Positions 12,601-54,961 of a stretch of DNA of 64,000 nucleotides are shown here, piece by piece. The DNA lies in NCBI RefSeq assembly GCF_902713615.1, contig NC_052152.1, positions 166,406,712-166,470,711 of the forward strand, in the 5' to 3' direction. Source of the DNA: Scyliorhinus canicula (taxonomy: Eukaryota). A program made the position numbers and the translations under genes. A model generated the notes under the pieces. That model worked only from the letters and a program-made list of their open reading frames with translations, searched no databases and was not told the DNA's origin. Positions within the stretch are counted from its first letter, which is position 1; each line of letters starts with the position of its first letter.

Positions 12601-14829
12601 GGGGGGCGGGGGGGGGGGGGGGGGGGGGGGGGTGGGGGGGGGGGGGGGCGATTATAATTACACCTTCGGGACAAAGTACCACCTTGGTACCCAGTGGAGC
12701 TTTCGTGGGGTGGTGATGTTAAGGAACCTGGTCGGGTTCTTTGACTTGGTGGAAGTCTGGCAGACTCTCCACCCTGACTCCAGCCTTTCACTTTTGTGAG
12801 GCCTGGGGTCAGAGCGTCCAGAATAGACCACCTTTTCATTTCAAGGCGTACCTGCCCCATGTCCGGACGGCCTGTGCAGCAGGTACTGTGCTCGGACCAC
12901 CGTCTGGTGTGGGCGGGCCTCACCCTGTCTTGCGCTCAGTCGCGGTACGCGTACTTGCATTTTAGCAACCTGCTGCTGTAGGACGAGCGGTTCCTGGGCT
13001 TGTTTCGTCACTTCTGGACCAGCTGGAAAAGGAAGCGGGGAGGCTTCCCCTCCTTAAGGCTATGATGGGATGTGGGCAAGACACACGTGTGGAACTTCTG
13101 TCAGGGGTATGCGAGGGGGTCGGCAAAAAGGCGGAAATCTAGGGTCAAGGAGTTGGAGAAGGAGGTGATGGACCCGGAGTCACCTCTCGGTCAGCCCAAT
13201 GAGGACCTGGCCCTGCGGCTGGTATACAGACAGAAGGTCACGCTGTGGGACCTGCAACTTGTTGGGTTCTGGGGCGCGTATGTGAGGTTGTGGATCCAGA
13301 TCCTCAGGGACATGGATTGCTGCTCCCCCTTCTTCTACTCGCTGGTAAAAAGACGCGGGGTCCGTCTCCAGCTCCTTATGCTGCTGGCCGACAATGGTTC
13401 CCTCGCTTTGGATCCGGAGGAGGTCAGGACCCAAATTCGAAGTTTCGACAGTGCCCTATTCTCTCCGGATCTATCCAGCCAGGATGCTTGCAGAGTTTTG
13501 TGGGCGGACCTGCCACAGGTCAGCCCAGAGGGCGAGGGGAGGCTTGAAACCCCTATAAGCCTGGGGGAGCTGACCGGCGCCCTCGACAGCCTGCCCAGGG
13601 CTGGATGGGTTGACCATGGAGTTCTTCGGGGTGTTCTGGGACGTCCTGGGGAGTGACTATGCGGGGCTCCTGAAGAAAGTATCGCAACCGGGAAATGCCC
13701 CTCTCATGGCGCAGAGCCACCATTACCCTGATGCCAAAGAGGGAGGATCTCTGCCATCTTAAAAAATTGTCATCCGGTCTCCCTCCTCAGCATGGATTAC
13801 AAGATTTTCGCCACGGTGATGTGTTTGCGCCTGGCAGTGTGCTGGACCACCTAATCCACCCTGACCAGTCCAACACAGTCCCGGGTCACACGATCCACGA
13901 CAACATCCATCTGGTCCGGGACCAGGTCCATCATTCCCAGAGGGTTGGTATGCCGAGCGTCTTCCTGTCCCTTGATCAGGAGAAGGCAATCAGGGTGGAT
14001 CACGAATATTTATTCGGGCCTCTGCAAGCATTCGGGTTCGGGACACAATTGTTTGCCTGGTTCCGACTTCTGTGTACTGCCGCAGAGTGTCTCGTTAAGG
14101 TTAATGAGTCCATGACGGCACCCCTTTGTTTTGGGAGAGGAGTGCATCAGGGCTGCCCCTTTTCTGGCCAATGCTATTCTATTTGCGGGGAGCCTTTCCT
14201 GCGCTTCCTACAGAGGAGGTTGTTGGGACTGCTTCTGCGCGGGCTGGGTATTGGGGTGATCCACTTGGCTTACGCTGATGACGTACTCCTCATGTTCACT
14301 GACCCTGCTGACATGAGAGAGTGCCAGGCTGTGTACTCTGACGCGTCTTCTGCCAGGAACAACCGGGCCAAGTTTTCCGGACACCTGGTCAGTCCGTGGA
14401 AAATGGACCCCCTCCCAGAGCTCAGGCCTTTCACCTGGTGCAGGACAAGCCTCTTCTACTTGGCAGTCCATCTCTGCTGGGCTGAAGACTCCTGGCCGGC
14501 TAACTGGCAGGGGTTGGAGACCAAGGTCGCCGCTTGCTTGAGACGCTGGACAGGACTTCTCCAAGTGCTGTCTTACAGGGGTCGGGTTCTTGTCATAAAC
14601 CAGCTGGTAGCTTCTATGTTGTGGTACCAGCTGGTCACTTTGACCCTTCCCCCAACGTTGTGACAAAGCTCCAGAGAATGCTTGTAAAGTTCTTCTGGGT
14701 CAAGAGACTGCACTGGGTCACCACTGAGGTTCTGAGTCTCCCGCTTAGGTAGGGCAACCAGTCACTAGTGCTTCCACCTTCAGACCCTGCAGGATACATT
14801 TACATTGTGCCCTGGCAAATAATTTCTTC

Positions 14830-15913: not shown

Positions 15914-16260
15914 ATAGAACATAGAACATAGAACAGTACAGCACAGAACAGGCCCTTCGGCCCTCGATGTTGTGCCGAGCATTGATCACCCTACTCAAAC
16001 CCAGGTATCCACCCTATACCCGTAACCCAACAACCCCCCCTTAACCTTACTTTAGGACACTACGGGCAATTTAGCATGGCCAATCCACCTAACCCGCACA
16101 TCTTTGGACTGTGGGAGGAAACCGGAGCACCCGGAGGAAACCCACGCACACACGGGGAGGACGTGCAGACTCCGCACAGACAGTGACCCAGCCGGGAACC
16201 GAACCTGGGACCCTGGAGCTGTGAAGCATTTATGCTAACCACCATGCTACCGTGCTGCCC
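15914..16260 (-). mobile_element. Full-length HE1 SINE in Tx1 3' UTR
   Basis: (ATAGAAC)n tail to GTGCTGCCC head; nearly identical to 52126-52468. Confidence 0.9.
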
Positions 16261-18096: not shown

Positions 18097-18649
18097 TGTG
18101 AGTGGAGAGCAGTGTTTGCTTCACTTGTTGCAGGTAAGCGTCCAGCACTATTGATGATTGGGAGCTGCTCCAATTGGGACAGGAGTCATGCTCCCTCCCT
18201 GAACAGTTTGCAACCTGCATTTCAAGTGGTCAAAGCACTTGCCAACGTTGAGGGGGTGGAGGGGGGAGTAGCAAGACCTCCCAACTGCCAGGGTACTCAA
18301 AAAAAAAAACACTTTTTCCAATAATCTTTTAAAGAAAGAGTAATTACGAAAAGGCACTAAAAAAAAAGAAATATCCCAATGGTTTTTACACTGCACCCCC
18401 CACAAGTATATTGCTATTCTTATTCCTGCAGGTTTTGAAACATCCTTGAGGGTCAATTATGCTACCTCAGTGGGAAAGTGCAGGCATCTGGAATTCACCC
18501 TCTGATTTACTTTATAACAATCAAAATGATAGTTAGATCTTAGCTTTATTGTCACACATAGGCTTACATTAACACTGCAAGGAAGTTATGAGCCAAAGTT
18601 TGAGGGAGAAGCTTTGTCCATAATTTTGATGGGGAGGGGCATAATGATA

Positions 18650-18820
18650 ATAATAATCACTTTTATTGTCACAAGTAGGCTTCAATGAAGTTACTGCAAA
18701 AAGCTCCTAGTCGCCACATTCCGCGCCAGTTCGGGGAGGCCGGTATGGGAATCTAACCCGTGCTGCTGCCTTGTTCTGCATTACAAGCCAGCTGTTTAGC
18801 CCACTGTGCTACACCAGCAC
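18650..18820 (-). mobile_element. Short tRNA-derived SINE
   Basis: Reverse complement of the family at 27967 and 51200. Confidence 0.8.
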
Positions 18821-19713
18821 CTTAATGGTTGAGGTGCTGATGTTATTTATGTAGGTCTGGTGAGCTGAGGGAGTGGGGAACACATGGGTGTCACAATGCA
18901 CCTCTCCGGGTTGAGGTCTTCTAATGTTGAGCCATCCCTGACACACTCACGAGTATGATTGGGGGTAGAGAGTTTACGGTTGCTGTTTCTGGTGATCCCA
19001 AGGTAACAGCCGGCGAGATTATTTTTGTGGGGCTCGGAGCAACACATGCTCCACAAAGTAAATTGCAAACGTATCTTCTGTAAAACTGGTCAGACTGTAC
19101 ATAGTGCACCCTCTGCCCATCTCTGATCTAAAAATGGCAATGCAATTCTAGGATTTGTATTAAAATGGACCAAGCAACCGATGATTTGGAAAGCCAGCAC
19201 TGGGCCTCTTTCAAGATGTCATCAGCCTCTTTTTTTTTGGTGTTAATTGAATGGGATGACAAACAATTCCATCTTGAGGCTATTGCCAACTGTTCATGAT
19301 ATGTGATACAAGTGAAAATCGACATCCTAATGTCTGTTGGATTTCTGGTGATGCATAGAGATCGATAGGTGTAGGGGTGTCTTGGGTGTGAGAGGTGTTC
19401 TTCCCACTGGGTATCAATAGGGTCTGCTGATGAGAATCTCTGCAGCAATAGCGAAAGGTTCCAAAGGAGGTCAATTCCAGCAACATGCTATGAGGCCGAG
19501 CTGTAATATAGGATACACACGATGACCAGGGCTTGTTTCGGACAGGAGTGAGATTAACTTAAAACGGCCCTGATTTCTCACCTCACCAACGGTGAGACAG
19601 AAAAAAGTTTTGATTTTTGATTACCCCCCACCCCTCCCCTTTGAAGGCCATTTTCCCCATTCCTTCAGCTTTGGAGTGATCCAGTCCTCTTATTAATAAA
19701 CCCCTCAGCAAAT

Positions 19714-23300: not shown

Positions 23301-25205
23301 TTGTTTCTGATAATTGCACTTCAACTTCATCTTCACTCTTTGATTTCTCCTCTTGTCTTAACCTGTGACTTTGCAACCTTGTTACTATGCAATGCGGAAA
23401 AATCCCAGGATATTTGTCCTTCAACACTTCAGTTGTCTGATTTTCCACTGGCTTATCAACCACAATAGGCAACACTCCCACCTGCGATCCAGCTATATAA
23501 TTACCCAAGATAAACTAGTCCTGGACAAGATAGTTTCTCTATTACTCCTACTACCACTTCACCACTCTTCACTGGACTTTCCAACCTGACCTTATATAAT
23601 TGAACACTACTCTGCTCACCCTGAATTCCACATATTACCACCTTTTCTCGCAACATTCTTCCCAAACTACATAACTCCTCATCTCTTACCATTAAATATT
23701 GACCAGCTCCCGTATCTCTTAAAATTGGGACTTCTTTACCTGCTCCTCCTGATACACGTGAGTAAAATTTACCCACACAAGTAAATTCTTTAAAGACATC
23801 TGGCACCTTCTTATCAATCATCTCTTGATCAGGCTATACAATCTTTTGCACATCCTTTGCTTCACTTGGGCTTTCCTTTACCACTTCAACAAACCCCACT
23901 GTCTCATCCTGTTTTACCACATCAGCCTTCCCAGTGCTTTTCTTCAACCACCAACACTGTGACTTTACATGGCCTAGTTTGTTACAGTGAAAATATTTGA
24001 AACATTTCATGTCTCTTTTTCATGCACCGTGGCTGGCTCTGCTGCACAGAAGGGCGGGAAAACGACTGGCAGGGCTATAGTCATAGGGGATTAAATCGTA
24101 AGGGGAATAGACAGACGTTTCTGTGGTCGAATACGAGACACCCGAATGGTATGTTGCCTCCCGGGTGCACGGGTCAGGGTGTCTCAGATCGGCTGCAGGA
24201 CATACTGAAGGGGGAGGGTGAACAGCCAGTTGTCGTAGAGCATATAGGCACCAACAATATAGGTAAAAAACGGGATGAGGTCCTACAATCAGAATTTAGG
24301 GAGTTAGGAGATAAATTTAAAAAGTAGGACCTCAAAGGTAGCAATCTCAGGATTGCGACCAGTGCCACGAGACAGTCAGAGTAGAAATTCAAGAATAGTC
24401 AGAGTAGAATACGTGGCTTGAGAGATGGTGCAGGAGAGAGGGGTTCAGATTTGTGGGACATTGGAACCGGTTCTGGGGGCGGTGGGACCATTACAAATTG
24501 GATGGTCTACACCTGGGCAGGACTGGGACTGGAACCAATGTCCTAGGGGGTGTTTTTGCTAACACCGTTGGGGAGGTTTTAAACTAATGTGGCAGGGGGA
24601 TGGGAACCAGATTAGGAAGTTAGAGGGACAAGTGGTCTGAGGTGCATTTGTTTTAATGCAAGAAGTGTAGCAGGTAAGGCAGACGAATTTAGGGCTTGGA
24701 TTAGTACCTGGGAATATGGTGTTATTGGTATTACTGAGACTTGGTTGAGGGAAGGGCAAGACTGGCAACTGAATATCCCAGGGTACAGATGCTTCAGGAG
24801 GGATAGAAAGGGAGGTAAAAGGGGTGGAGGAGTTGCATTACTAGTCAGAGATGATATCACAGCTGTGATTAAGGAGGGCATGATGGAGGATTCGAGCACT
24901 GAGGCAATATGGATAGAGCTAAGAAATAGGAAGGGTGCAGTAACATTGTTGTGACTTTACTACAGGCCTCCCAAAAGCGAGCGTGACGTAGAGGTACAAA
25001 TATGTATACAGATTAGAGAACAATGTAGGAGCAATAGGTGGTCGTGATGGGAGATTTTTACTTCCCCAACATTGAATGGGACTCATGTAGTGTTGGAGGT
25101 GTAGATGGAGCAGAATTTGTAAGGAGCATCCAGGAGAGTTTTTTAGAGCAGTATGTAAATAGGCAAACTCGGGAAGGGGCCATACTGGACCTGGTATTGG
25201 GGAAT

Positions 25206-27013
25206 GGGGATGGGACAATTGGGCGCGGCCGTTTTGGCACGGCCGTTTGGGCGCCATGGGACAATTGGGCGCAGCCAATTTGGCACGGCCGTTTGGGCGC
25301 TGACGACAGAAATTCTTGTATTCAGAAAACTATTGTATTTGTTGTTGAAACATTCAATTTACTATTTTGAACTGTCAGTTGTGTCAATTTCAGCGGCCGG
25401 CTCACTTTGATCCGGAGAGGGAAGCTGCTCTCACTGAAGCAATCAGCCGGCCGCTGAAATTGACAGTGCCCACTGATTGGAGGGAGAGAGCAGCCGGCAG
25501 TGTCAATTTCAGCGGCCGGCTGATTGCTTCAGTGAGAGAGCAGCTTCCCTCTCCGGATCAAAGTGAGCTGGCTGCTGAAATTGACACTGCCGGCTGCTTC
25601 CTCCCTCCAATCAGAAACATTAAAACTTAAAACTTGGATTGGAGGGAGAGAGCAGCGGGCAGTGTCAATTTCAGCGGCCGGCTCACTTTGATCCGGAGAG
25701 GGAAGCTGCGCTCTCACTGAAACAATCAGCCGGCCGCTGAAATTGACACTGCCGAGGGGGGGGCGGGTGTTGGGGGGGAGAAGAGGGGGGGCGGGTGTTG
25801 GGGGGGAGAAGAGGGGGGGCGGGTGTTGGGGGGGAGAGGAGGGGGGGCGGGTGTTGGGGGGAGAGGAGGGGGGCGGGTGTTGGGGGGGAGAGGAGGGGGG
25901 CGGGTGTTGGGGGGGAGAGGAGGGGGGGCGGGTGTTGGGGGGGGAGAGGAGGGGGGCGGGTGTTGGGGGGGGAGAGGAGGGGGGCGGGTGTTGGGGGGGA
26001 GAGGAGGGGGGCGGGTGTTGGGGGGGAGAGGAGGGGGGCGGGTGTTGGGGGGGGAGAGGAGGGGGGCGGGTGTTGGGGGGGAGAGGAGGGGGGGCGGGTG
26101 TTGGGGGGGGAGAGGAGGGGGCGGGTGTTGGGGGGGAGAGGAGGGGGGCGGGTGTTGGGGGGGGAGAGGAGGGGGGCGGGTGTGGGGGGGAGAGGAGGGG
26201 GGCGGGTGTTGGGGGGGAGAGGAGGGGGCGGGTATTGAGGGGGGCGGGTGTTGGGGGGGAGAGGAGGGGCGGGTGTTGAGGGGGGCGGGTGTTGGGGGGG
26301 AGAGGAGGGGGGCGGGTGTTGGGGGGGGAGAGGAGGGGGGCGGGTGTGGGGGAGACCCCCCTGGGGGTGTGGGGGAGCGAGAGTGGACCTGCGGGTGTTG
26401 GGGGAGAGAGGAGGGCCCTGCGGGTGTTGGTGGAGAGAGGGGGGCCCTGCGGGTGTTGGGGGGGCAGAGGAGGGGGGCGGGTGTTGGGGGGGGGGGAGGT
26501 GAGGGGGGCGGGTGTGGGGGAGACCCCCCTGTGGGTGTGGGGGAGAGCCCCTGGGGGTGTGGGGGAGAGAGGGTCTGACCTCTCCCCCCGCCCCCCGCCC
26601 CCCCATGACTCACAATGGGAAGCGCATGCATAGATTTTTAAATAAATTTAAAACCCCCATCATGGATATCCGCGGCTCGGTTACTTTGCATTGGTATTCA
26701 CCAAGGAGAGGGACATGACGGATGTTGAGGCTAGGGATGGATGTTTAAATACTCTAGGTCATGTCGGCATAAGGAAGGGGGTGGCTGTCTTGGACCCCAA
26801 CACCCGCGTTATAAAGGGGGACTACTGTATCATGTATGAGTAAGAACACTGGTTTTTAAACAAAATGTAACAAAGTTTGTGCGACTACTAAATTTGATGA
26901 ACACACCTCCCTCATGTTGACGCCAAAACGTCCGGCGCCAAAACAGCCGGCGCCAAAACGGTTGGCGCCAAAACGGCCGCGCCCAAATGGCTGCGCCAAA
27001 ACGTACCTAACCC
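25206..27013. mobile_element. Non-autonomous Mutator-like DNA transposon with repetitive imperfect TIRs
   Basis: 9-bp TSD TTGGGGAAT (25197-25205 / 27014-27022), GGG...CCC termini, inverted arrays of ~15-bp GGCGCCAAAAC-type units. Confidence 0.8.
25755..26530 (+). repeat. G-rich minisatellite, ~27-bp unit G5-7CGGGTGTTG6-8AGAGGA
   Basis: More than 20 tandem units visible. Confidence 0.92.
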
Positions 27014-27966
27014 TTGGGGAATGATCCCGGCCAGGTGGTTGAAGTTTCAGTTGGTGATTACTTTGGGAATAGCGATCACAATTCCGTAAGTTTTAGAATA
27101 CTCATGGACAAAGACGAGAGTGGTCCTAAAGGAAGAGCGCTAAATTGGTGAAAGGCCGAGTATAACAAAATTCGGCAGGAGCTAGGGAATGTGGATTGGG
27201 AGCAACTGTTTAAGGGTAAATCCACATTTGAAATGTGGGAGTCTTTTAAAGAAAGGTTGATTAGAGTGCAGGACAGACATGTCCCTGTGAAAATGAGAGA
27301 TAGAAATGGCAAGATTGGGGAACCATGGGTGATGGGTGGAATTGTGAGACTAGCTAAGATGAAAAAGGAAGCATACATAAGTTCGAGGCGACTCAAAACT
27401 GATGAAGCTTTGGAGGAATATCGGGAAAGTAGGACAAATCTCAAACGCGCAATGAAGAGGGCTAAAAGGAGTCATGAAATATCTTTGGCTAACAGGGTTA
27501 AGGAAAATTCCAAAGCCTTTTATTCGTATATAAGGAGCAAGAGGGTGACTAGAGAAAGGATTGGTCCACTCAAATACAAAATTTATGCGTGGAGTCAGAG
27601 GAAATGAGTGAGATTCTTAATGAGTACTTTGCATTGGTATTCACCAAGGAGAGGGACATGACGGATGTTGAGGCTAGGGATGGATGTTTAAATACTCTAG
27701 GTCATGTCGGCATAAGGAAGGGGGAGGTTTTGGGTATTCTAAGGCATTAAGGTGGGCAAGTCCCCAGGATCGGATGGGATCTATCCCAGGTTACTGAGAG
27801 AAACGAGAGACTAAATAGCTGGGGCCTTAACAGATATCGCTGCAGTATCCTTGCACACGGGTGAGGTCCCAGAGGACTGGAGAATTGCTAATGTTGTCCC
27901 TTTGTTTAAGAAGGGTAGCAGGATAATCCAGGGAATTATAGACCTGTGAGCTTGACGTCAGTGGTA

Positions 27967-28146
27967 GGCTGGTTTAGCCCACTCGGCTAAATTGCTGGCT
28001 TTTAAAGCAGATCAAGCAGGCCAGCAGCACGGTTCGATTCCCGTACCAGCCTCCCCGGACAGGCGCCGGAATGTGGCGACTAGGGGCTTTTCACAGTAAC
28101 TTCATTGAAGCCTACTCGTGACAATAAGCGATTTTCATTTCATTTC
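27967..28146 (+). mobile_element. Short tRNA-derived SINE in CR1 RT
   Basis: Box B GGTTCGATTCCC, shared tail, (CATTT)n end; CR1 resumes afterwards. Confidence 0.85.
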
Positions 28147-29889
28147 AAACTGTTGGAGAAGATACTGAGGGATAGGATCTATTCACATTTGGAAGAAAAT
28201 AGACTTATCAGTGATAGGCAGCATGGTTTTGTGCAGGGAAGGTCATGCCTTACAAACCTAATAGAATTGTTTGAGGAAGTGACAAAGTTAATTGATGAGG
28301 GAAGGGCTGTAGATGTCATATACATGGACTTCAGTAAGGCGTTTGATAAACTTTCCCATGGCAGGTTGATGGAAAAAGTGAAGTCGTATGGGGATCAGGG
28401 TGTACTAGCTAGAAGGATAAAGAACTGGCTGAGCAACAGGAGACAGAGAGTAGTGGTGGAAGGGAGTGTCTCAAAATGGAGAAAGATGACTAGTGGTGTT
28501 CCACAGGGATCTGTGCTCGGACCACTTTTGTTTGTGATATACATAAATGATCTGGACGAAGGTATAGGTGGTCTGATGAGCAAGTTTGCAGATGATACTA
28601 AGATTGGTGGAGTTGCAGATAGCAAGGAGGACTTTCAGAGAATACAGCAAAATGTAGATAGATTGGAGAGTCGGGCAGAGAAATGGCAGATGGAGTTCAA
28701 TCCAGGCAAATGCGAGGTGATGCATTTTGGAAGATCCAATTCAAGAGCGGACTTTATGTTCAATAGAAGAGTCCTGGGGAAAATTGATGTACAAAGAGAT
28801 CTGGGAGTTCAGGTCCATTGTACCCTGAAGGTGGCAACGCAGGTTGATAGAGTGGTCAAGAAGGCATACAGCATGCTTGCCTTCATCGGACGGGGTATTG
28901 AGTACAAGAGTCGGCAGGTCATGTTCCAGTTGTATAGGACTTTGGTTAGGCCACATTTGGAATACTGCGTGTAGTTCTGGTCACCGTATTACCAGAAGGA
29001 TGTGGATGCTTTAGAGAGGGTGCAGAGGAGATTCATCAGGGTGTTGCCTGGTCTGGAGGGTGCTAGCTATGAAGAAAGGTTGAGTAGATTAGGATTGTTT
29101 TAGTTGGAAAGACGGAGGTTGAGTGGGGAACCTGATTGAGGTCTACAAAATTATGAGAGGTATGGACAGGGTGGATAGCAACAAGCTTTTTCCAAGAGTG
29201 GGGGTGTCAATTACAAGGGGTCACGATTTCAATAACTTCCCAAACAACATCCAGTAGACAGAAGAAACACCTTTTAACTGAAGCACATCAGGTTTACATT
29301 CACTACTGAAAACATTTATAATTCTGAATTCACCAAATGATCAAGAGATAGTCTTTTGATGGTAGAGAGAACAACAGTACACCTGCTTGGTCTGGCTTCA
29401 GCTCCAACAGAAAATGAAACTTAAACATACCCTGCAGCAAACAGCATAAAACGAAAGTAAAAGCTGACGCCGCCCGGCTCCACCCATACTCTGACATCAC
29501 TGATAAATACCCATTCTAGAAGGTACATTTCTTAATCATCCATTTCGTAAAGGTACTCTTTGGGGTCAGTTATGTGATAGGATGGTTTTAGGTCAAGCTA
29601 TTCAGCTGACTAGGTCCCTGGTTAAAGCCCACTGTGTTTGGTGCAGGCAGAGAGCTCTGCCTTTGTCCATAACTGGTTGGTGTTGATGTCTTGTCCACCT
29701 TGCTTTGTTGGTTTGTTTACACAGTGCAAGGAATGTTAGCTGATGTGGTTCTACTATGTCCATTTTTAAACAGCTCAGAAACATCCAGAATTTCCATCAT
29801 GTCATCATGACGGCTATTCTATCAGTTCAGCCTATTGTCCATTTCGAAAAAAATTATAAAGAAGCCAGGTTGACACACACAAGAATATC

Positions 29890-30195
29890 TGGGTGGCACA
29901 GTGGCTAGCACCGTTGCTTCACAGTGCCAGGGACCCGGGCTCGATTCCCGGCTTGGGTCACTGTCTGTGCGGAGTCTGCACGTTCGCCTCGTGTTTGTGT
30001 GGGTTTCCTCCGGGTGCTCCGGTTTCCTCCCACAAGTCCTGAAATACGTGTTTGTTAGGTGAATTGGACATTCTGAATTGTCCCTCTGTGTACCCGAACA
30101 GGCGCCGGAATGTGGCGACTAGGGGATTTTCACAGTACCTTCATTGCCGTGTTAACGTAAGCCTACTTGTGACACTAGTAAAGATTATTATTATA
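29890..30195 (+). mobile_element. SINE with HE1-like head and alternative tail
   Basis: Same architecture as 9064-9376. Confidence 0.82.
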
Positions 30196-50126: not shown

Positions 50127-51199
50127 AACTAATAATGTGATGCCTCCTCCTCTTTTAACCCCTCCCATGTCTTGCCTGAAGATTCTATATCACGGAATGT
50201 TGAGCTGCCAATCCTGTCCCTCCTTTAACCATGTCTCTGTGATGGCTACTATATGTGCCAATCCTCACCCTTAACTCGTCCATTTTAATTGTAATACTCC
50301 TGGCATTAAAGTGGAGGCCATCCAGCCTTGCCATACTCCCTTGAAACGTAATGCAGCTGTACTCCGTCTGATTTGATTGCTTTACTGTATTATGCTGTGT
50401 CCATATTCCGCTAACAGTCCTGTGTCCCCTCCCCGTGATGAATTATTTTAAACTCCTTCTAACAGCACAAGCAAACCCTCCCGCAAGGATGTTAGTCCTG
50501 CTCGAGTTCAGATGTAGACCTCCAGGGTCTCCAGAAACAGTCCCAGCGATCCAGGAATCTAAAGCTCTCCCAAATGTACAATATCTATCACAGTTCCAGC
50601 TTAGCCCAACTAACTTACCAGAGTTTAAATCTGGGAGCCTCCCAGTCTGGTTTGTCAAACCATTTTGTGCATTGCGCGCAATCTTCCTGACAGGAAGATG
50701 TTTTCACAAGGATTCTTCTCGTCACTCCCTTCAAATTCTACTGCACGCTCATAAGGGATTTAAAATGTGCTCTTCCATGTTCTGCATTTAGTTTGAAGAT
50801 TTTCAATTTAGTTCCATTTTATTCTAACCATGGTTAACTTTAAATCGAAGCATGATTGCTGTTGCCAAGTGATTCCTGTTTCTACTTGTGTTGCAAAATA
50901 TGACCTTTCAGTGCTAAATATACTCTTTGATGCTAATAACTGTCCAATAGCTCAGAGGTGAAGTCTCTGGCTGAAGTTTCCGGAGACCCTGTGTCTTCTA
51001 CTCAGCTGGAATTTAACCAGGTATCTGTGATTTTTTGGAACATTGATTTGGTTTAATTTAATTTGGGCTGTTTAGCTGCAAATTTCTGCTGAGCTATTTA
51101 CTGTGTGCAAAGCCCTGCTGGTGGCGCATGATCATAACCTCCATCTTTACATTTCAGAATAGGGGTCCAAACTTTCCTACCTTGGGTTTGCTAGTCTAA

Positions 51200-51472
51200 G
51201 GGCTGGTTTAGCTCAGTGGGCTAAATAGCTGGCTTGTAATGCAGAACAATGCCGACCGCGGCAGGACTCGAACCTGCAACCTTCTGATATCATTACTAAG
51301 ATTCACCGAAGTCAGATGCCTTATCCATTAGGCCACGTGACCACCGGCTTGCAGAACAATGCCAGCAGCACGAATTCAATTCTCCCCGAACAGGCGCCGG
51401 AATGTGGCGACTAGGGGCTTTTCACAGTAACTTCATTGAAGCCTACTTGTGACATTAAGCGATTATTATTAC
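51200..51472 (+). mobile_element. Short tRNA-derived SINE interrupted by a tRNA copy
   Basis: GGGCTGGTTTAGCTCAGTGG head, shared tail, (ATT)n end. Confidence 0.85.
51253..51342 (-). tRNA. tRNA-Arg(TCG) pseudogene with 17-nt intron
   Basis: GGTCACGTGGCCTAATGGATAAGGCATCTGACTTCGG[TGAATCTTAGTAATGAT]ATCAGAAGGTTGCAGGTTCGAGTCCTGCCGCGGTCG; 73 nt plus an intron after position 37; A5-C68 acceptor-stem mismatch. Confidence 0.9.
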
Positions 51473-52125
51473 TATATTCGCTGATCTTGGCAAGACCCTA
51501 AGAAAATACTATAGGAGACGATCAGCCAATGTTTCTAATTCCGATTCCGATATTGCAAACGCTTTGAAAGTATTGTGTATGGGCACTGAGTCAGGACAAT
51601 ATTGGACTTGGTTTTAATAATCATTATGATTGAATAGCCTAAAGGCAATTGTTGTTAAGGACCAGGTTAAATAATGACCAATTGGTGAGCTGCTGCATGT
51701 GGGACTGTACTAGTACGTTCTTGAGGAAAGTTGGAAATGGAAAGAAGAGAAGTACATCAATTAATGGTATTTCTGCCACTTTTGTGCTGCTAGTGAGGGA
51801 GACAATCAATGCTAGAATGGCAGCATTTTTCCTGTGATTCTCCAGCCCACCTTTTGTGTGAACATGGCTCCCCAGTGGGAGCCTAGGATTGCAGAATTAA
51901 CCCTAGCTCTAAAGAGTCAAGGGCAAATTGCCAAGAGGGTGAAGCTACCTTTCACATAATATTGTACGAATACCAACTGCTTTTTATAAAACTAATATTT
52001 TGGGATGCCTAAAATGCATTTGCATGGAGGCCTGATGCCTGTTCCAGGTAACAGTTTGCATGTCTGTATAATCTGTGCAAGATGTGTAAAAGACTGACCT
52101 GTCAGCAGTTTAGGCCTATACTCTG

Positions 52126-52865: not shown

Positions 52866-53036
52866 TGAAATAATTATTCTGCCTAATTCTACCTTCCAGC
52901 TTTTGGTTTGTAGTCCTGTAGGTAACAGCACCTCAAGCACAAATCTGGTGTTCTTGATTAATAAGGAGATTTCTTAATTAATAAGGGAATCAGTGGTTAA
53001 GGGGAATAGGCAGGAGAATGGGGATGCGGCACATAT

Positions 53037-53227
53037 GAAATGAAAAAATGAAATGAAAATCGCTTATTGTCACGAATAGGCTTCAATGAAGTTACTGTGA
53101 AAAGCCCCTAGTTGCCACATTCCGGCGCCTGTCCGGGGAGGCTGGTACGGGAATCGAACTGTGCTGCTGGCCTGCTTGGTCTGCTTTAAAAGCCAGCGAT
53201 TTAGCCCAGTAAACGAAACCAGCCCCT
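53037..53227 (-). mobile_element. Short tRNA-derived SINE within a CR1 tail
   Basis: Reverse complement of 27967-28146 with (AAATG)n. Confidence 0.85.
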
Positions 53228-54961
53228 GATCGAATTGTGGAGCAGAATCGATGTGCCGAATGGCCTAATTCTGCTCCCATATCTTATGGTCAATGAATAG
53301 AGGCTCCAATGATCTTATGATCTGAGCAATTCCTTTTTTCTTATTTATCTATCCACAGAATGTGGGTATTCCTGACGAGGCCAATACGTGTTATCCATCC
53401 TTAATTGTTCTTGGGAAGTTGGTGGTGAGCTGCCACTCTGAACCATTGCAGTTTCTATGGTGAAAATACCAATAGCCTGTACTCCAAAGTAGGAGTGTTC
53501 TTTTTCACTGGACTTCTGCTGTCAAAGACACATAAATTTTTTATCGCTTAACACTTCACTGATGCTCTGGTTTTTAGTCTTGTAGGACAAAGACGCCCTT
53601 CATGGCAGGTTGTTGAAAAAACTACACAACATATTTTACCTGTAGCTATTTTTACAGTTGAAGCTACTGGTGGACACACTTGCAATGCAGCACTGAGTAT
53701 TCTCTGGGCATAATTTTCTCTATGACGATTTAGTAAAAGGAATATCAATGGAGGGGGAGTCAAACATGTATGTTTGTCTCATAGAACCTCCATTCGGGTT
53801 AATCATCATATTGCCTGTATACAGATTTGGTACTTGTATTTGGCTGTATTATGGCCAATCAAAAGGCATTGACTAACATTAAGACCTCAAAAAACACCTT
53901 TATACGCTCCAAAATGTAACTAGAAGTGCTTTGACAAGTGATGCAGTGGTTATCTGGGCTTGTATGCCTGGGATACAGATAGCCAGGTTTCCCTGCAGCT
54001 AAACAATCCTTCTACCCTGCACAGTTTAGGAGTGAGAACGTATTGCTGTACAAAGATGAAATCCTTGAAACCTGACAGTGTGGCTCTTCAGCTGATTTTT
54101 GAACAAATTGCATCCAGACAGGCAGACTATCAAAAGCTGAAGCCCAATTTACATAAGTTTGTTGCATTTGGGATGTGGATACCACTGGCCAGACCAACAT
54201 TTGTTGTCTATCCCTAATTGAGCTTCAGAAAGTTGTGGCGACTGTTTGTGTTTAATGAGTTCAACTGATGATTGGTGGAAGGGGCTCTGCTGCAGAAGAC
54301 ACTGAAATAGTCACATTGTGTGGTTAGATGGTCACACAGCACTACACTGTGATCAAGTCAGGGATTTATCACTTCCCTGAAAGCTTCCCCACCACTGAGG
54401 TCAGAACAAGGTGTAACATTATAAACTCTCTAGTCCTCTGGAACCACCTCCATGTTTAAGGATGGTTGGAAGATTATGGCAAGTATCCCTACATTTTTCA
54501 TGCATGATTCCCTCTGCATCCCTGGATGAAACCCACCTGATTCTAGTGACTTATCAACTACAACTAGCCTTTCTAATACCCCCCATCTTTGTGCATTTCT
54601 AGCCCATCCAGTATCTCAAACATGTCACTATGGCTGAGACAGCATCCTTATCCGAGGTAAAGAGAGATGGACATTACTCTTTTAGCTCCTCAATTATGTC
54701 TTCTGCTTCCATGTCCTTTTTGATATCTAGTGGATGTCATTCCTCCTCTCAGTACATTTTTTATGCTTTGTGTGCTTATAAAATACTTCAGATTCTTGTG
54801 CTAAGCCCCGGAAAGGCTGTTCTTGATCACATTTATTGCTCCATATCTGCTGCTGTGCCAGATGAACTTATTTGTTCCATGATACACCAATCTTGCCTCC
54901 ATGTGCTACTCTCGGTCTGAAAATAACCATTAATTTTTATTTTTTTTCTTGCTGCATGTAG

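What the first reader, a model, noticed from the sequence alone, without database searches (positions are those of the whole stretch)
51240..51363. Retro-copy of an unspliced, intron-containing pre-tRNA-Arg(UCG)
Seen: a 14-bp TSD TGCAGAACAATGCC (51240-51253 / 51350-51363) brackets a tRNA-Arg(TCG) with a 17-nt intron at the canonical 37/38 site and a 7-nt 5' extension (AGCCGGT). There is no CCA, poly(A) or oligo-T terminator, and the discriminator base overlaps the TSD. It sits antisense inside a SINE's own tRNA-like head. Known: human intron-bearing tRNAs are mainly Tyr-GTA, Ile-TAT, Leu-CAA and Arg-TCT, not Arg-TCG. Inference: this lineage has intron-containing Arg-TCG genes, and a leader-bearing precursor was captured as a tailless retropseudogene, fossilising a processing intermediate.
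Basis: partly seen in the sequence, partly recalled or inferred. Interest (0 to 1): 0.72.

Follow-up and report, generated by a model that had tools for sequence, protein, structure and literature searches.

The report
Retro-copied unspliced arginine tRNA precursor
A 96-base DNA copy of an unprocessed arginine tRNA transcript, still carrying its short leader and a 17-base piece at the usual tRNA-intron site, was pasted into an older mobile element of this shark-type genome; it is a clean example of a known kind of event, and it hints that arginine (UCG) tRNA genes carry introns in this lineage.

Summary
A tRNA (Rfam RF00005, 52.6 bits, E 5e-10) lies on the minus strand at 51253-51342. It is bracketed by an exact 14-bp direct repeat at 51240-51253 and 51350-51363. 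Deleting the insert and one repeat copy restores a continuous SINE that aligns through the junction with three sister copies, so this is a clean insertion with a target-site duplication. Deleting 17 nt (51289-51305) leaves a 73-nt cloverleaf with anticodon UCG and 20 of 21 stem pairs.

Seven extra bases precede position 1. There is no CCA, A-tail, T-run or gene flank. The best reading is target-primed reverse transcription of a leader- and intron-bearing pre-tRNA-Arg(UCG), a "tailless retropseudogene"-like event.

Three things were not shown:
- that the source genes carry this intron; only unchecked scan notes on other pieces of this genome say so
- that the intron is spliced
- that the template was a true 3'-trimmed intermediate rather than an internally primed primary transcript

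The scan has already noted similar intron-bearing Arg(TCG) and Pro genes and pre-tRNA retro-copies elsewhere in this genome. Verdict: a new member of a known kind, of moderate interest.

The parts
51240..51253 (.). Left copy of the 14-bp target-site duplication (TGCAGAACAATGCC). Its last base, C51253, may instead be the complement of the tRNA discriminator G73.
   Evidence: Exact match to 51350-51363. Sister SINE copies carry this segment only once.
51254..51288 (-). 3' exon of the tRNA-Arg(UCG) copy (positions 38-72): anticodon-stem 3' strand, variable loop, T arm with an intact B box (GGTTCGAGTCC), and acceptor 3' strand.
Evidence: Rfam alignment and stem check.
51289..51305 (-). 17-nt intron-like insert (TGAATCTTAGTAATGAT in tRNA sense) between positions 37 and 38.
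   Evidence: Rfam shows 20 nt where the model has 3. Removing it gives a 73-nt cloverleaf. C32 can pair with G(-3), but the helix is weak.
51306..51342 (-). 5' exon (positions 1-37): acceptor 5' strand GGTCACG, D arm with an A box, anticodon-stem 5' strand, and loop CUUCGG with anticodon UCG.
51343..51349 (-). 7-nt 5' extension AGCCGGT, read as the 5' leader of the primary Pol III transcript (it starts with a purine).
   Evidence: The sequence lies between the right duplication copy and tRNA position 1. The leader reading is an inference.
51350..51363 (.). Right copy of the 14-bp target-site duplication.
51201..51475 (+). Host: an older tRNA-headed SINE with a (ATT)n-like tail, interrupted in its head by the insert.
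   Evidence: With 51254-51363 removed, it aligns end to end (73-75% identity) with copies at 18630-18830(-), 27945-28160(+) and 53030-53245(-). ARAGORN calls the heads of two of those sister copies tRNA-like.

Best explanation
A nuclear pre-tRNA-Arg(UCG) was reverse-transcribed at a staggered chromosomal break in the head of an older SINE. The transcript still had a 7-nt 5' leader and a 17-nt intron at 37/38, and its usable 3' end lay at or next to the discriminator base.

Proposed steps (all inferred from the product):
1. The plus strand was nicked after C51253, and that 3' end primed cDNA synthesis from the RNA's last base(s). At least the G73:C pair could have provided 1 nt of pairing.
2. 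Synthesis ran to the 5' end of the transcript.
3. The second strand was cut 14 nt away, and fill-in produced the 14-bp duplication.

The result is a dead, tailless retro-copy. It has an acceptor-stem mismatch and no terminator.

Shown: the insertion, the duplication, the transcript-shaped boundaries, the tRNA fold and the position of the extra 17 nt. Inferred: the RNA intermediate, which reverse transcriptase acted (a resident non-LTR element is likeliest), and that the 17 nt is a genuine intron of the source gene family.
For: - The duplication is an exact 14/14 repeat that directly abuts the unit, and it is unique of its kind in the window.
- The empty site can be reconstructed and is continuous in three sister SINE copies.
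- The unit begins 7 nt upstream of position 1 with a purine and ends at position 72/73. No upstream or downstream gene flank was copied, and the first T4 run is 355 nt away.
- It is the only Rfam-level RNA in the 64 kb, so it is not part of a tRNA gene cluster.
- The extra 17 nt lies exactly at 37/38, one site among about 72, in a copy that also kept its leader. That is what an unspliced precursor would give.
- The antisense orientation in the SINE rules out a reverse-transcriptase template jump from SINE RNA onto a tRNA; that would put the tRNA in the SINE's sense (sequence logic).
- Non-LTR reverse-transcriptase fragments are present in the window.
- Retro-copies of unprocessed tRNAs without A-tails, with duplications and target complementarity, are a described class (PMC5322556).
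- Unchecked scan notes report intron-bearing Arg(TCG) genes and other pre-tRNA retro-copies in this same genome.
Against:
- The nick site AATGCC/AGCAGC is unlike the TT/WAAAA consensus of L1-made tailless copies.
- Only 1 nt of target-RNA complementarity is demonstrable.
- The sister SINE copies in the window show no obvious long duplications (by eye only), so the enzyme may differ from the one that moves the SINEs.
- The anticodon-intron helix of this copy is weak.
- Three differences from a perfect acceptor stem cluster in positions 2-5 and are unexplained.
Confidence: 0.75

Rival explanations
1. A retro-copy of an intronless tRNA-Arg(UCG) precursor or tRNA that later acquired a private 17-bp insertion, or into which the reverse transcriptase added foreign bases, in the anticodon loop. 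On this reading the lineage has no Arg-UCG intron.
For: - Only one copy could be inspected.
- The 17 nt forms only a weak anticodon-intron helix.
- No paper reporting Arg-TCG introns in vertebrates was found.
- The scan notes mention a 16-nt, not a 17-nt, intron.
Against: - The insert lies exactly between positions 37 and 38, and removing it restores a perfect 7-nt loop and 5-bp stem. By chance that is about 1 site in 72.
- The copy also keeps a 5' leader, so the template was a precursor.
- Three independent first-reader notes report inserts at the same site in Arg(TCG) genes of this genome (unchecked).
Confidence: 0.08
2. DNA-level event: a fragment of a tRNA-Arg gene, or a free cDNA, was captured during repair of a staggered double-strand break. 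No retrotransposon endonuclease or target-primed reverse transcription was involved.
For: - There is no A-tail and no L1-type target motif.
- An earlier follow-up in this genome judged another repeat-flanked cassette to be local DNA copying (s1-246653).
Against: - The fragment ends coincide, within about 1 nt, with the expected RNA ends: a purine start 7 nt upstream, and position 72/73 at the other end. Random DNA breakage would not give this.
- No promoter-upstream sequence or terminator was carried along.
- A 14-bp duplication is typical of staggered-nick retroposition.
Confidence: 0.08
3. A relocated but still working tRNA-Arg(UCG) gene. The retro-copy kept its internal A and B boxes and is transcribed and spliced at the new site.
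For: The A box (TGGCCTAATGG) and B box (GGTTCGAGTCC) are intact, and the Rfam score is 52.6 bits.
Against: - The acceptor stem has an A5xC68 mismatch plus two G.U pairs.
- There is no T4 terminator for 355 nt.
- It is a lone copy inside a SINE.
- No RNA evidence could be obtained.
Confidence: 0.05

Closest known systems
Tailless retropseudogenes of tRNAs and other small RNAs (Schmitz et al. 2004; Noll et al. 2015, PMC5322556)
   Same: - A small Pol III RNA, here an unprocessed tRNA, copied into DNA without an oligo(A) tail.
- A perfect flanking target-site duplication within the 8-30 nt range.
- The junction possibly shares base(s) with the RNA's 3' end.
- A nuclear precursor served as the template.
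   Different: - Those copies are typically truncated at internal loops; this one runs to position 72/73.
- Their target consensus TT/WAAAAWW and 2-18 nt of complementarity are not seen here (AATGCC/AGCAGC, 1 nt).
- They were tied to the relaxed L1 of therians and the anole, and were not found in the other vertebrates tested. This genome is shark-type, and the enzyme is unknown.
Canonical eukaryotic tRNA introns (in human Tyr-GTA, Ile-TAT, Leu-CAA, Arg-TCT), cut by TSEN
   Same: - Position 37/38.
- A length of 17 nt, within the usual 15-30 nt (PMC10485636).
- C32 can pair with the intron base 3 nt before the 3' splice site, leaving a 3-nt bulge.
   Different: - The isoacceptor is Arg-UCG, which is not among the usually spliced vertebrate families.
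- From my memory of the human sequences, the body resembles Arg-TCG rather than the intron-bearing Arg-TCT. That argues against a simple anticodon switch.
- The anticodon-intron helix is weak in this copy.
- Splicing is untested.
Lineage-specific gain or loss of tRNA introns in yeasts (Yoshihisa 2014, PMC4090602)
   Same: An isodecoder carries an intron in one lineage but not in its relatives. All genes of an isodecoder tend to share the intron state.
   Different: That pattern is documented for fungi. For a vertebrate Arg-UCG family it rests here on one retro-copy plus unchecked notes.
tRNA-derived SINEs
   Same: A tRNA-related sequence dispersed by retroposition and flanked by a duplication.
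   Different: It has no LINE-derived body or tail, occurs once in the window, and has a body close to a real tRNA. It is a one-off retropseudogene, not a SINE family.

Membership tests
tRNA (Rfam RF00005), Arg-UCG isoacceptor | Cloverleaf fold scoring above the family threshold | tested here: met
   52.6 bits against a gathering score of 29, model positions 1-71 of 71. 20 of 21 stem pairs.
tRNA (Rfam RF00005), Arg-UCG isoacceptor | Anticodon UCG at 34-36 in a 7-nt loop, with U33 and a purine at 37 | tested here: met
   The loop is CUUCGG|A once the 17 nt is removed. ARAGORN's Glu(ttc) call uses a frame starting 1 nt earlier.
Working tRNA gene | Fully paired acceptor stem and a nearby oligo-T Pol III terminator | tested here: not met
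   A5xC68 is a mismatch. The first T4 run is 355 nt downstream.
Canonical eukaryotic tRNA intron | Located between positions 37 and 38 | tested here: met
Canonical eukaryotic tRNA intron | Anticodon-intron (A-I) base pair: position 32 pairs with the intron base at -3, and the 3' splice site lies in a 3-nt bulge | tested here: inconclusive
   C32 and G(-3) could pair. The lowest-energy local fold uses another register (U34-A, C35-G, G36-U; -5.8 kcal/mol). The copy may also have mutated.
Canonical eukaryotic tRNA intron | Present in the functional genes and removed from the RNA | not testable with these tools
Only unchecked notes s1-203743, s1-203762 and s1-233987 bear on this.
Tailless retropseudogene (Schmitz 2004 / Noll 2015) | RNA-derived insert without an oligo(A) tail, flanked by a target-site duplication | tested here: met
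Tailless retropseudogene (Schmitz 2004 / Noll 2015) | 3' truncation at an internal single-stranded region of the RNA | tested here: not met
   The copy extends to position 72/73. It ends in the single-stranded 3' terminus, not in an internal loop.
Tailless retropseudogene (Schmitz 2004 / Noll 2015) | Target site complementary to the last 2-18 nt of the copied RNA | tested here: inconclusive
   Only 1 nt (G73/C51253) is shared for certain. More would be shared if the source trailer begins GCATT, which is unknown.
Tailless retropseudogene (Schmitz 2004 / Noll 2015) | L1-type nick-site consensus TT/WAAAA and dependence on a relaxed L1 | tested here: not met
   The nick context is AATGCC/AGCAGC. 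The reverse-transcriptase fragments in the window resemble L1 ORF2p only weakly (E about 1e-7). Dependence itself is not testable.
tRNA-derived SINE | Multi-copy family with a LINE-related 3' part | tested here: not met
   There is a single copy in 64 kb and no body or tail beyond the tRNA. The genome-wide copy number is not testable.

The most novel reading that the evidence does not exclude
Sharks splice a wider set of tRNA families than other vertebrates, including Arg-UCG and Pro. They also have a reverse-transcription machinery, not the therian-type L1, that repeatedly pastes tailless nuclear Pol III precursors into the genome with 12-14-bp duplications. Such retro-copies would then be dated fossils of the leader, intron and end-processing state of ancient pre-tRNAs.
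Probability: 0.3. Interest if true: 0.55.

Novelty: new member of a known kind. Interest (0 to 1): 0.36.

Why it matters
A leader- and intron-bearing retro-copy shows, without any RNA data, that a gene of this form was transcribed in the germ line. It therefore supports a lineage-specific Arg-UCG tRNA intron in a cartilaginous fish. That would add a vertebrate case to the intron gain-and-loss pattern known from yeasts.

It also suggests that tailless retroposition of nuclear small-RNA precursors is not confined to therian mammals and the anole, and that it may use an enzyme with a different target preference. A single dead copy has no functional consequence by itself.

Tried and rejected
- **Read laying.** I asked for 50950-51650 on two DNA runs of the species, one of a related species and one RNA run. 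The aim was to look for an orthologous empty site, paralogous Arg-TCG copies and spliced reads. I then sent no letters of 51252-51288 to any search tool and worked beside them.
- **The look-up of sequencing runs on the insert alone.** Only 2 of the 6 sampled words were held, by unrelated coded organisms. This was uninformative.
- **Metagenome scan.** A 25-mer from the anticodon loop plus intron (51289-51313) gave 0 hits.
- **The search of earlier findings by sequence.** Blank.
- **Unconstrained RNA fold of the precursor.** The fold is not a cloverleaf, and the z-score is 0.04. It is uninformative because of the damaged acceptor stem.
- **Literature.** I found no paper on Arg-TCG introns or shark tRNA introns. 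Schmitz et al. 2004 is not held.
- **Template-jump chimera with the SINE RNA.** Rejected because of the antisense orientation.
- **DNA transposon.** Rejected. The only terminal inverted repeat is the acceptor stem, and a 14-bp duplication is atypical for one.
- **ARAGORN's Glu(ttc) call.** Rejected as a frame starting 1 nt earlier.

Full report
**Observation**

The plus strand reads ...GGCTTGTAA-TGCAGAACAATGCC-[96 nt]-TGCAGAACAATGCC-AGCAGCAC.... The 14-mer occurs exactly twice in the window with no mismatch. A script listing all exact direct repeats of 14 nt or more with 40-400 nt spacing found this to be the only isolated one. All others lie in tandem-repeat blocks at about 11.1, 16.1 and 25.2-26.4 kb.

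On the minus strand the 96 nt contain a full-length tRNA by Infernal/Rfam: RF00005, 51253-51342, 52.6 bits against a gathering score of 29, E 5e-10. It has 20 nt where the model has three loop positions.

I dissected the unit:
- leader AGCCGGT, 51343-51349
- 5' exon of 37 nt, 51306-51342
- 17 nt, TGAATCTTAGTAATGAT, 51289-51305
- 3' exon plus discriminator, 51253-51288

Without the 17 nt the sequence is a 73-nt cloverleaf. All D, anticodon and T stem pairs are intact. The loop is CUUCGGA, giving anticodon UCG with U33 and G37. The acceptor stem has one mismatch (A5xC68) and two wobbles (G2.U71, U3.G70). ARAGORN's label Glu(ttc) comes from a frame that starts one base earlier; the stem geometry and the Infernal alignment favour UCG. 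A20 and C35, known arginine identity elements (textbook knowledge), are present.

**It is an insertion into a pre-existing SINE**

The flanks belong to a tRNA-headed SINE. Its core, GGAATGTGGCGACTAGGGGCTTTTCACAGTAAC, occurs six times in the window. When 51254-51363 is removed, the host aligns without a break through the junction with three sister copies of the same head type: 18630-18830(-), 27945-28160(+) and 53030-53245(-). Each sister copy carries the target segment once, for example GGCTTGTAATGCAGAAC-AAGGCAGCAGCAC. So the 14-mer is a true target-site duplication, and the SINE is older than the insert. The insert is antisense to the SINE.

**What the boundaries say**

- The unit starts with a purine 7 nt before tRNA position 1. 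That is the usual place for a Pol III start (general knowledge).
- It ends at position 72, or at 73 if G51253 is counted as the discriminator rather than as duplication.
- Nothing of a donor gene's upstream region or terminator came along, and the first T4 run in tRNA sense is 355 nt away.
- No other Rfam family reaches threshold anywhere else in the 64 kb, so this is not a member of a tRNA gene array.
- No second copy of the D-arm motif exists in the window.

Transcript-shaped ends plus a staggered-cut duplication are the signature of retroposition by target-primed reverse transcription. The cDNA strand is the plus strand, so the priming nick lay after C51253 (5'-AATGCC/AGCAGC-3').

The antisense orientation excludes the alternative of a reverse transcriptase jumping from SINE RNA onto a tRNA. 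That would place the tRNA in the SINE's sense and would not duplicate internal SINE sequence.

**The 17 nt**

They sit exactly at the one site where eukaryotic tRNA introns occur, and their length is in the usual range (PMC10485636). The copy also kept its leader, so its template was a precursor; an unspliced intron is therefore the economical reading.

Structure gives only weak help. C32 could pair with the intron base at -3 (G), leaving the standard 3-nt bulge AU|A. However, the best constrained fold uses U34-A, C35-G and G36-U, at only -5.8 kcal/mol for the arm.

I could not look at any other Arg-TCG gene of this genome. The scan's own index lists three first-reader notes of Arg(TCG) genes with an insert at 37/38, one of them quoted as 16 nt, on other pieces of the same genome. 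It also lists many notes and follow-ups on intron-bearing tRNA-Pro genes, some of them retro-copied from unspliced RNA, and a note of a tailless retro-copy of a tRNA-Ile precursor fragment. These are unchecked leads. They agree with the intron reading but do not prove it.

**Was it a processing intermediate?**

The product has a leader and an intron but no trailer and no CCA. The end falling within one base of the RNase Z site speaks for this.

The model published for tailless retropseudogenes is internal priming, where the nicked target pairs with the RNA (PMC5322556). A primary transcript whose trailer began GCAUU would give the same product. Only 1 nt of shared sequence is certain. This point stays open.

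**Which enzyme?**

This is unknown.
- The nick context is not the TT/WAAAA of L1-made tailless copies.
- Two RVT_1 fragments lie in the window (13695-14663 and 28105-28974). They resemble L1 ORF2p, R2 and group II reverse transcriptases only weakly (E about 1e-7), so they are non-LTR but of undetermined clade.
- By eye, the sister SINE copies show no obvious long duplications, so the enzyme may differ from the one that moves the SINEs.
- Notes elsewhere in this genome mention ribozyme-bearing and Penelope-like retro-insertions with 12-13-bp duplications. A Penelope-like reverse transcriptase is a speculative alternative.
- In the small-spotted catshark, LINEs make up 34% of the genome and most of the recently active elements, and about a third of the genome in other sharks and the little skate (PMC11979771). 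The species here is coded, and I infer "shark-type" only from earlier follow-ups.

**Age and state**

Zero differences in 14 duplicated positions bounds the divergence only loosely: the 95% upper bound is about 0.21 between the two copies. The copy is best regarded as dead, given the acceptor mismatch, the missing terminator and its lone position inside a SINE, although its A and B boxes are intact. The cluster of three departures from a perfect stem at positions 2, 3 and 5 is unexplained. They could be post-insertion transitions, features of the source gene, or copying errors at the template's 5' end.

**Comparison with what is known**

Retro-copies of processed and unprocessed tRNAs without A-tails and with duplications were described in mammals. 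They were later found by the thousand in therians and in the anole, but not in platypus or chicken; the anole was the only non-mammalian vertebrate with them (PMC5322556). The present case works like those, but it fails or leaves open three of their defining features: internal truncation, the L1 target motif and 2-18 nt of complementarity. I therefore do not file it as an L1-type member.

Lineage-specific tRNA intron gain and loss is documented in yeasts (PMC4090602). In the held library I found no report of an Arg-TCG intron in a vertebrate or of shark tRNA introns. I could not consult GtRNAdb.

From my memory of the human sequences, the body resembles Arg-TCG rather than the intron-bearing Arg-TCT, which would argue against a simple anticodon switch. 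This was not tested.

**Limits**

After that I sent none of those letters to any search tool. The remaining Rfam scans stopped at 51239 and restarted at 51364, and the metagenome pattern came from 51289-51313 (no hit). Paralogues, orthologues, population state and expression were therefore not examined.

**Verdict**

This is a new member of a known kind, a tailless pre-tRNA retro-copy, in an unusual lineage and from an isoacceptor not known to be spliced in vertebrates. The scan has already noted the same theme elsewhere in this genome.

Noticed in passing
window 9085-9375(+), 29905-30195(+) versus 18630-18830(-), 27945-28160(+), 51201-51475(+), 53030-53245(-): Two SINE families share a nearly identical core and tail (CCCGAACAGGCGCCGGAATGTGGCGACTAGGGGCTTTTCACAGTAACTTCATTG...GTGACAATAA) but have different tRNA-like heads. 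The first family also has a longer body and a 12-nt insert after CATTG. This looks like head swapping on a common LINE-recognised module.
   Followed up: partly
window 51375-51385: The host SINE lacks about 11 nt of the T-arm-like segment that its sister copies keep (GGTTCGATTCCCGTACCAGCC versus GAATTCAATTC).
   Followed up: no
window 25200-26400: A block of G-rich tandem repeats (units such as GGTGTTGGGGGGGAGAGGAGGGGGGCGG, with spacings of about 27, 54 and 81 nt). Beside it are inverted and direct repeats of GTGTCAATTTCAGCGGCCGGCT. Long ORFs on both strands here have no Pfam match. Another first-reader note places a MULE at 26682-26781.
   Followed up: no
window 13695-14663(+) and 28105-28974(+): Two reverse-transcriptase (RVT_1) ORF fragments of non-LTR type. 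The second starts directly after the SINE copy at 27966-28150.
   Followed up: partly
window 16090-16148 and about 287 nt downstream: Two adjacent exact direct repeats of 25-26 nt, 287-288 nt apart. This is probably two neighbouring copies of one repeat family.
   Followed up: no
window 27966-28055(+), 53136-53225(-): ARAGORN calls tRNA-Phe(aaa) of 90 nt at two sites. These are the tRNA-like heads of SINE copies, not tRNA genes, and Rfam finds nothing there at gathering score.
   Followed up: yes
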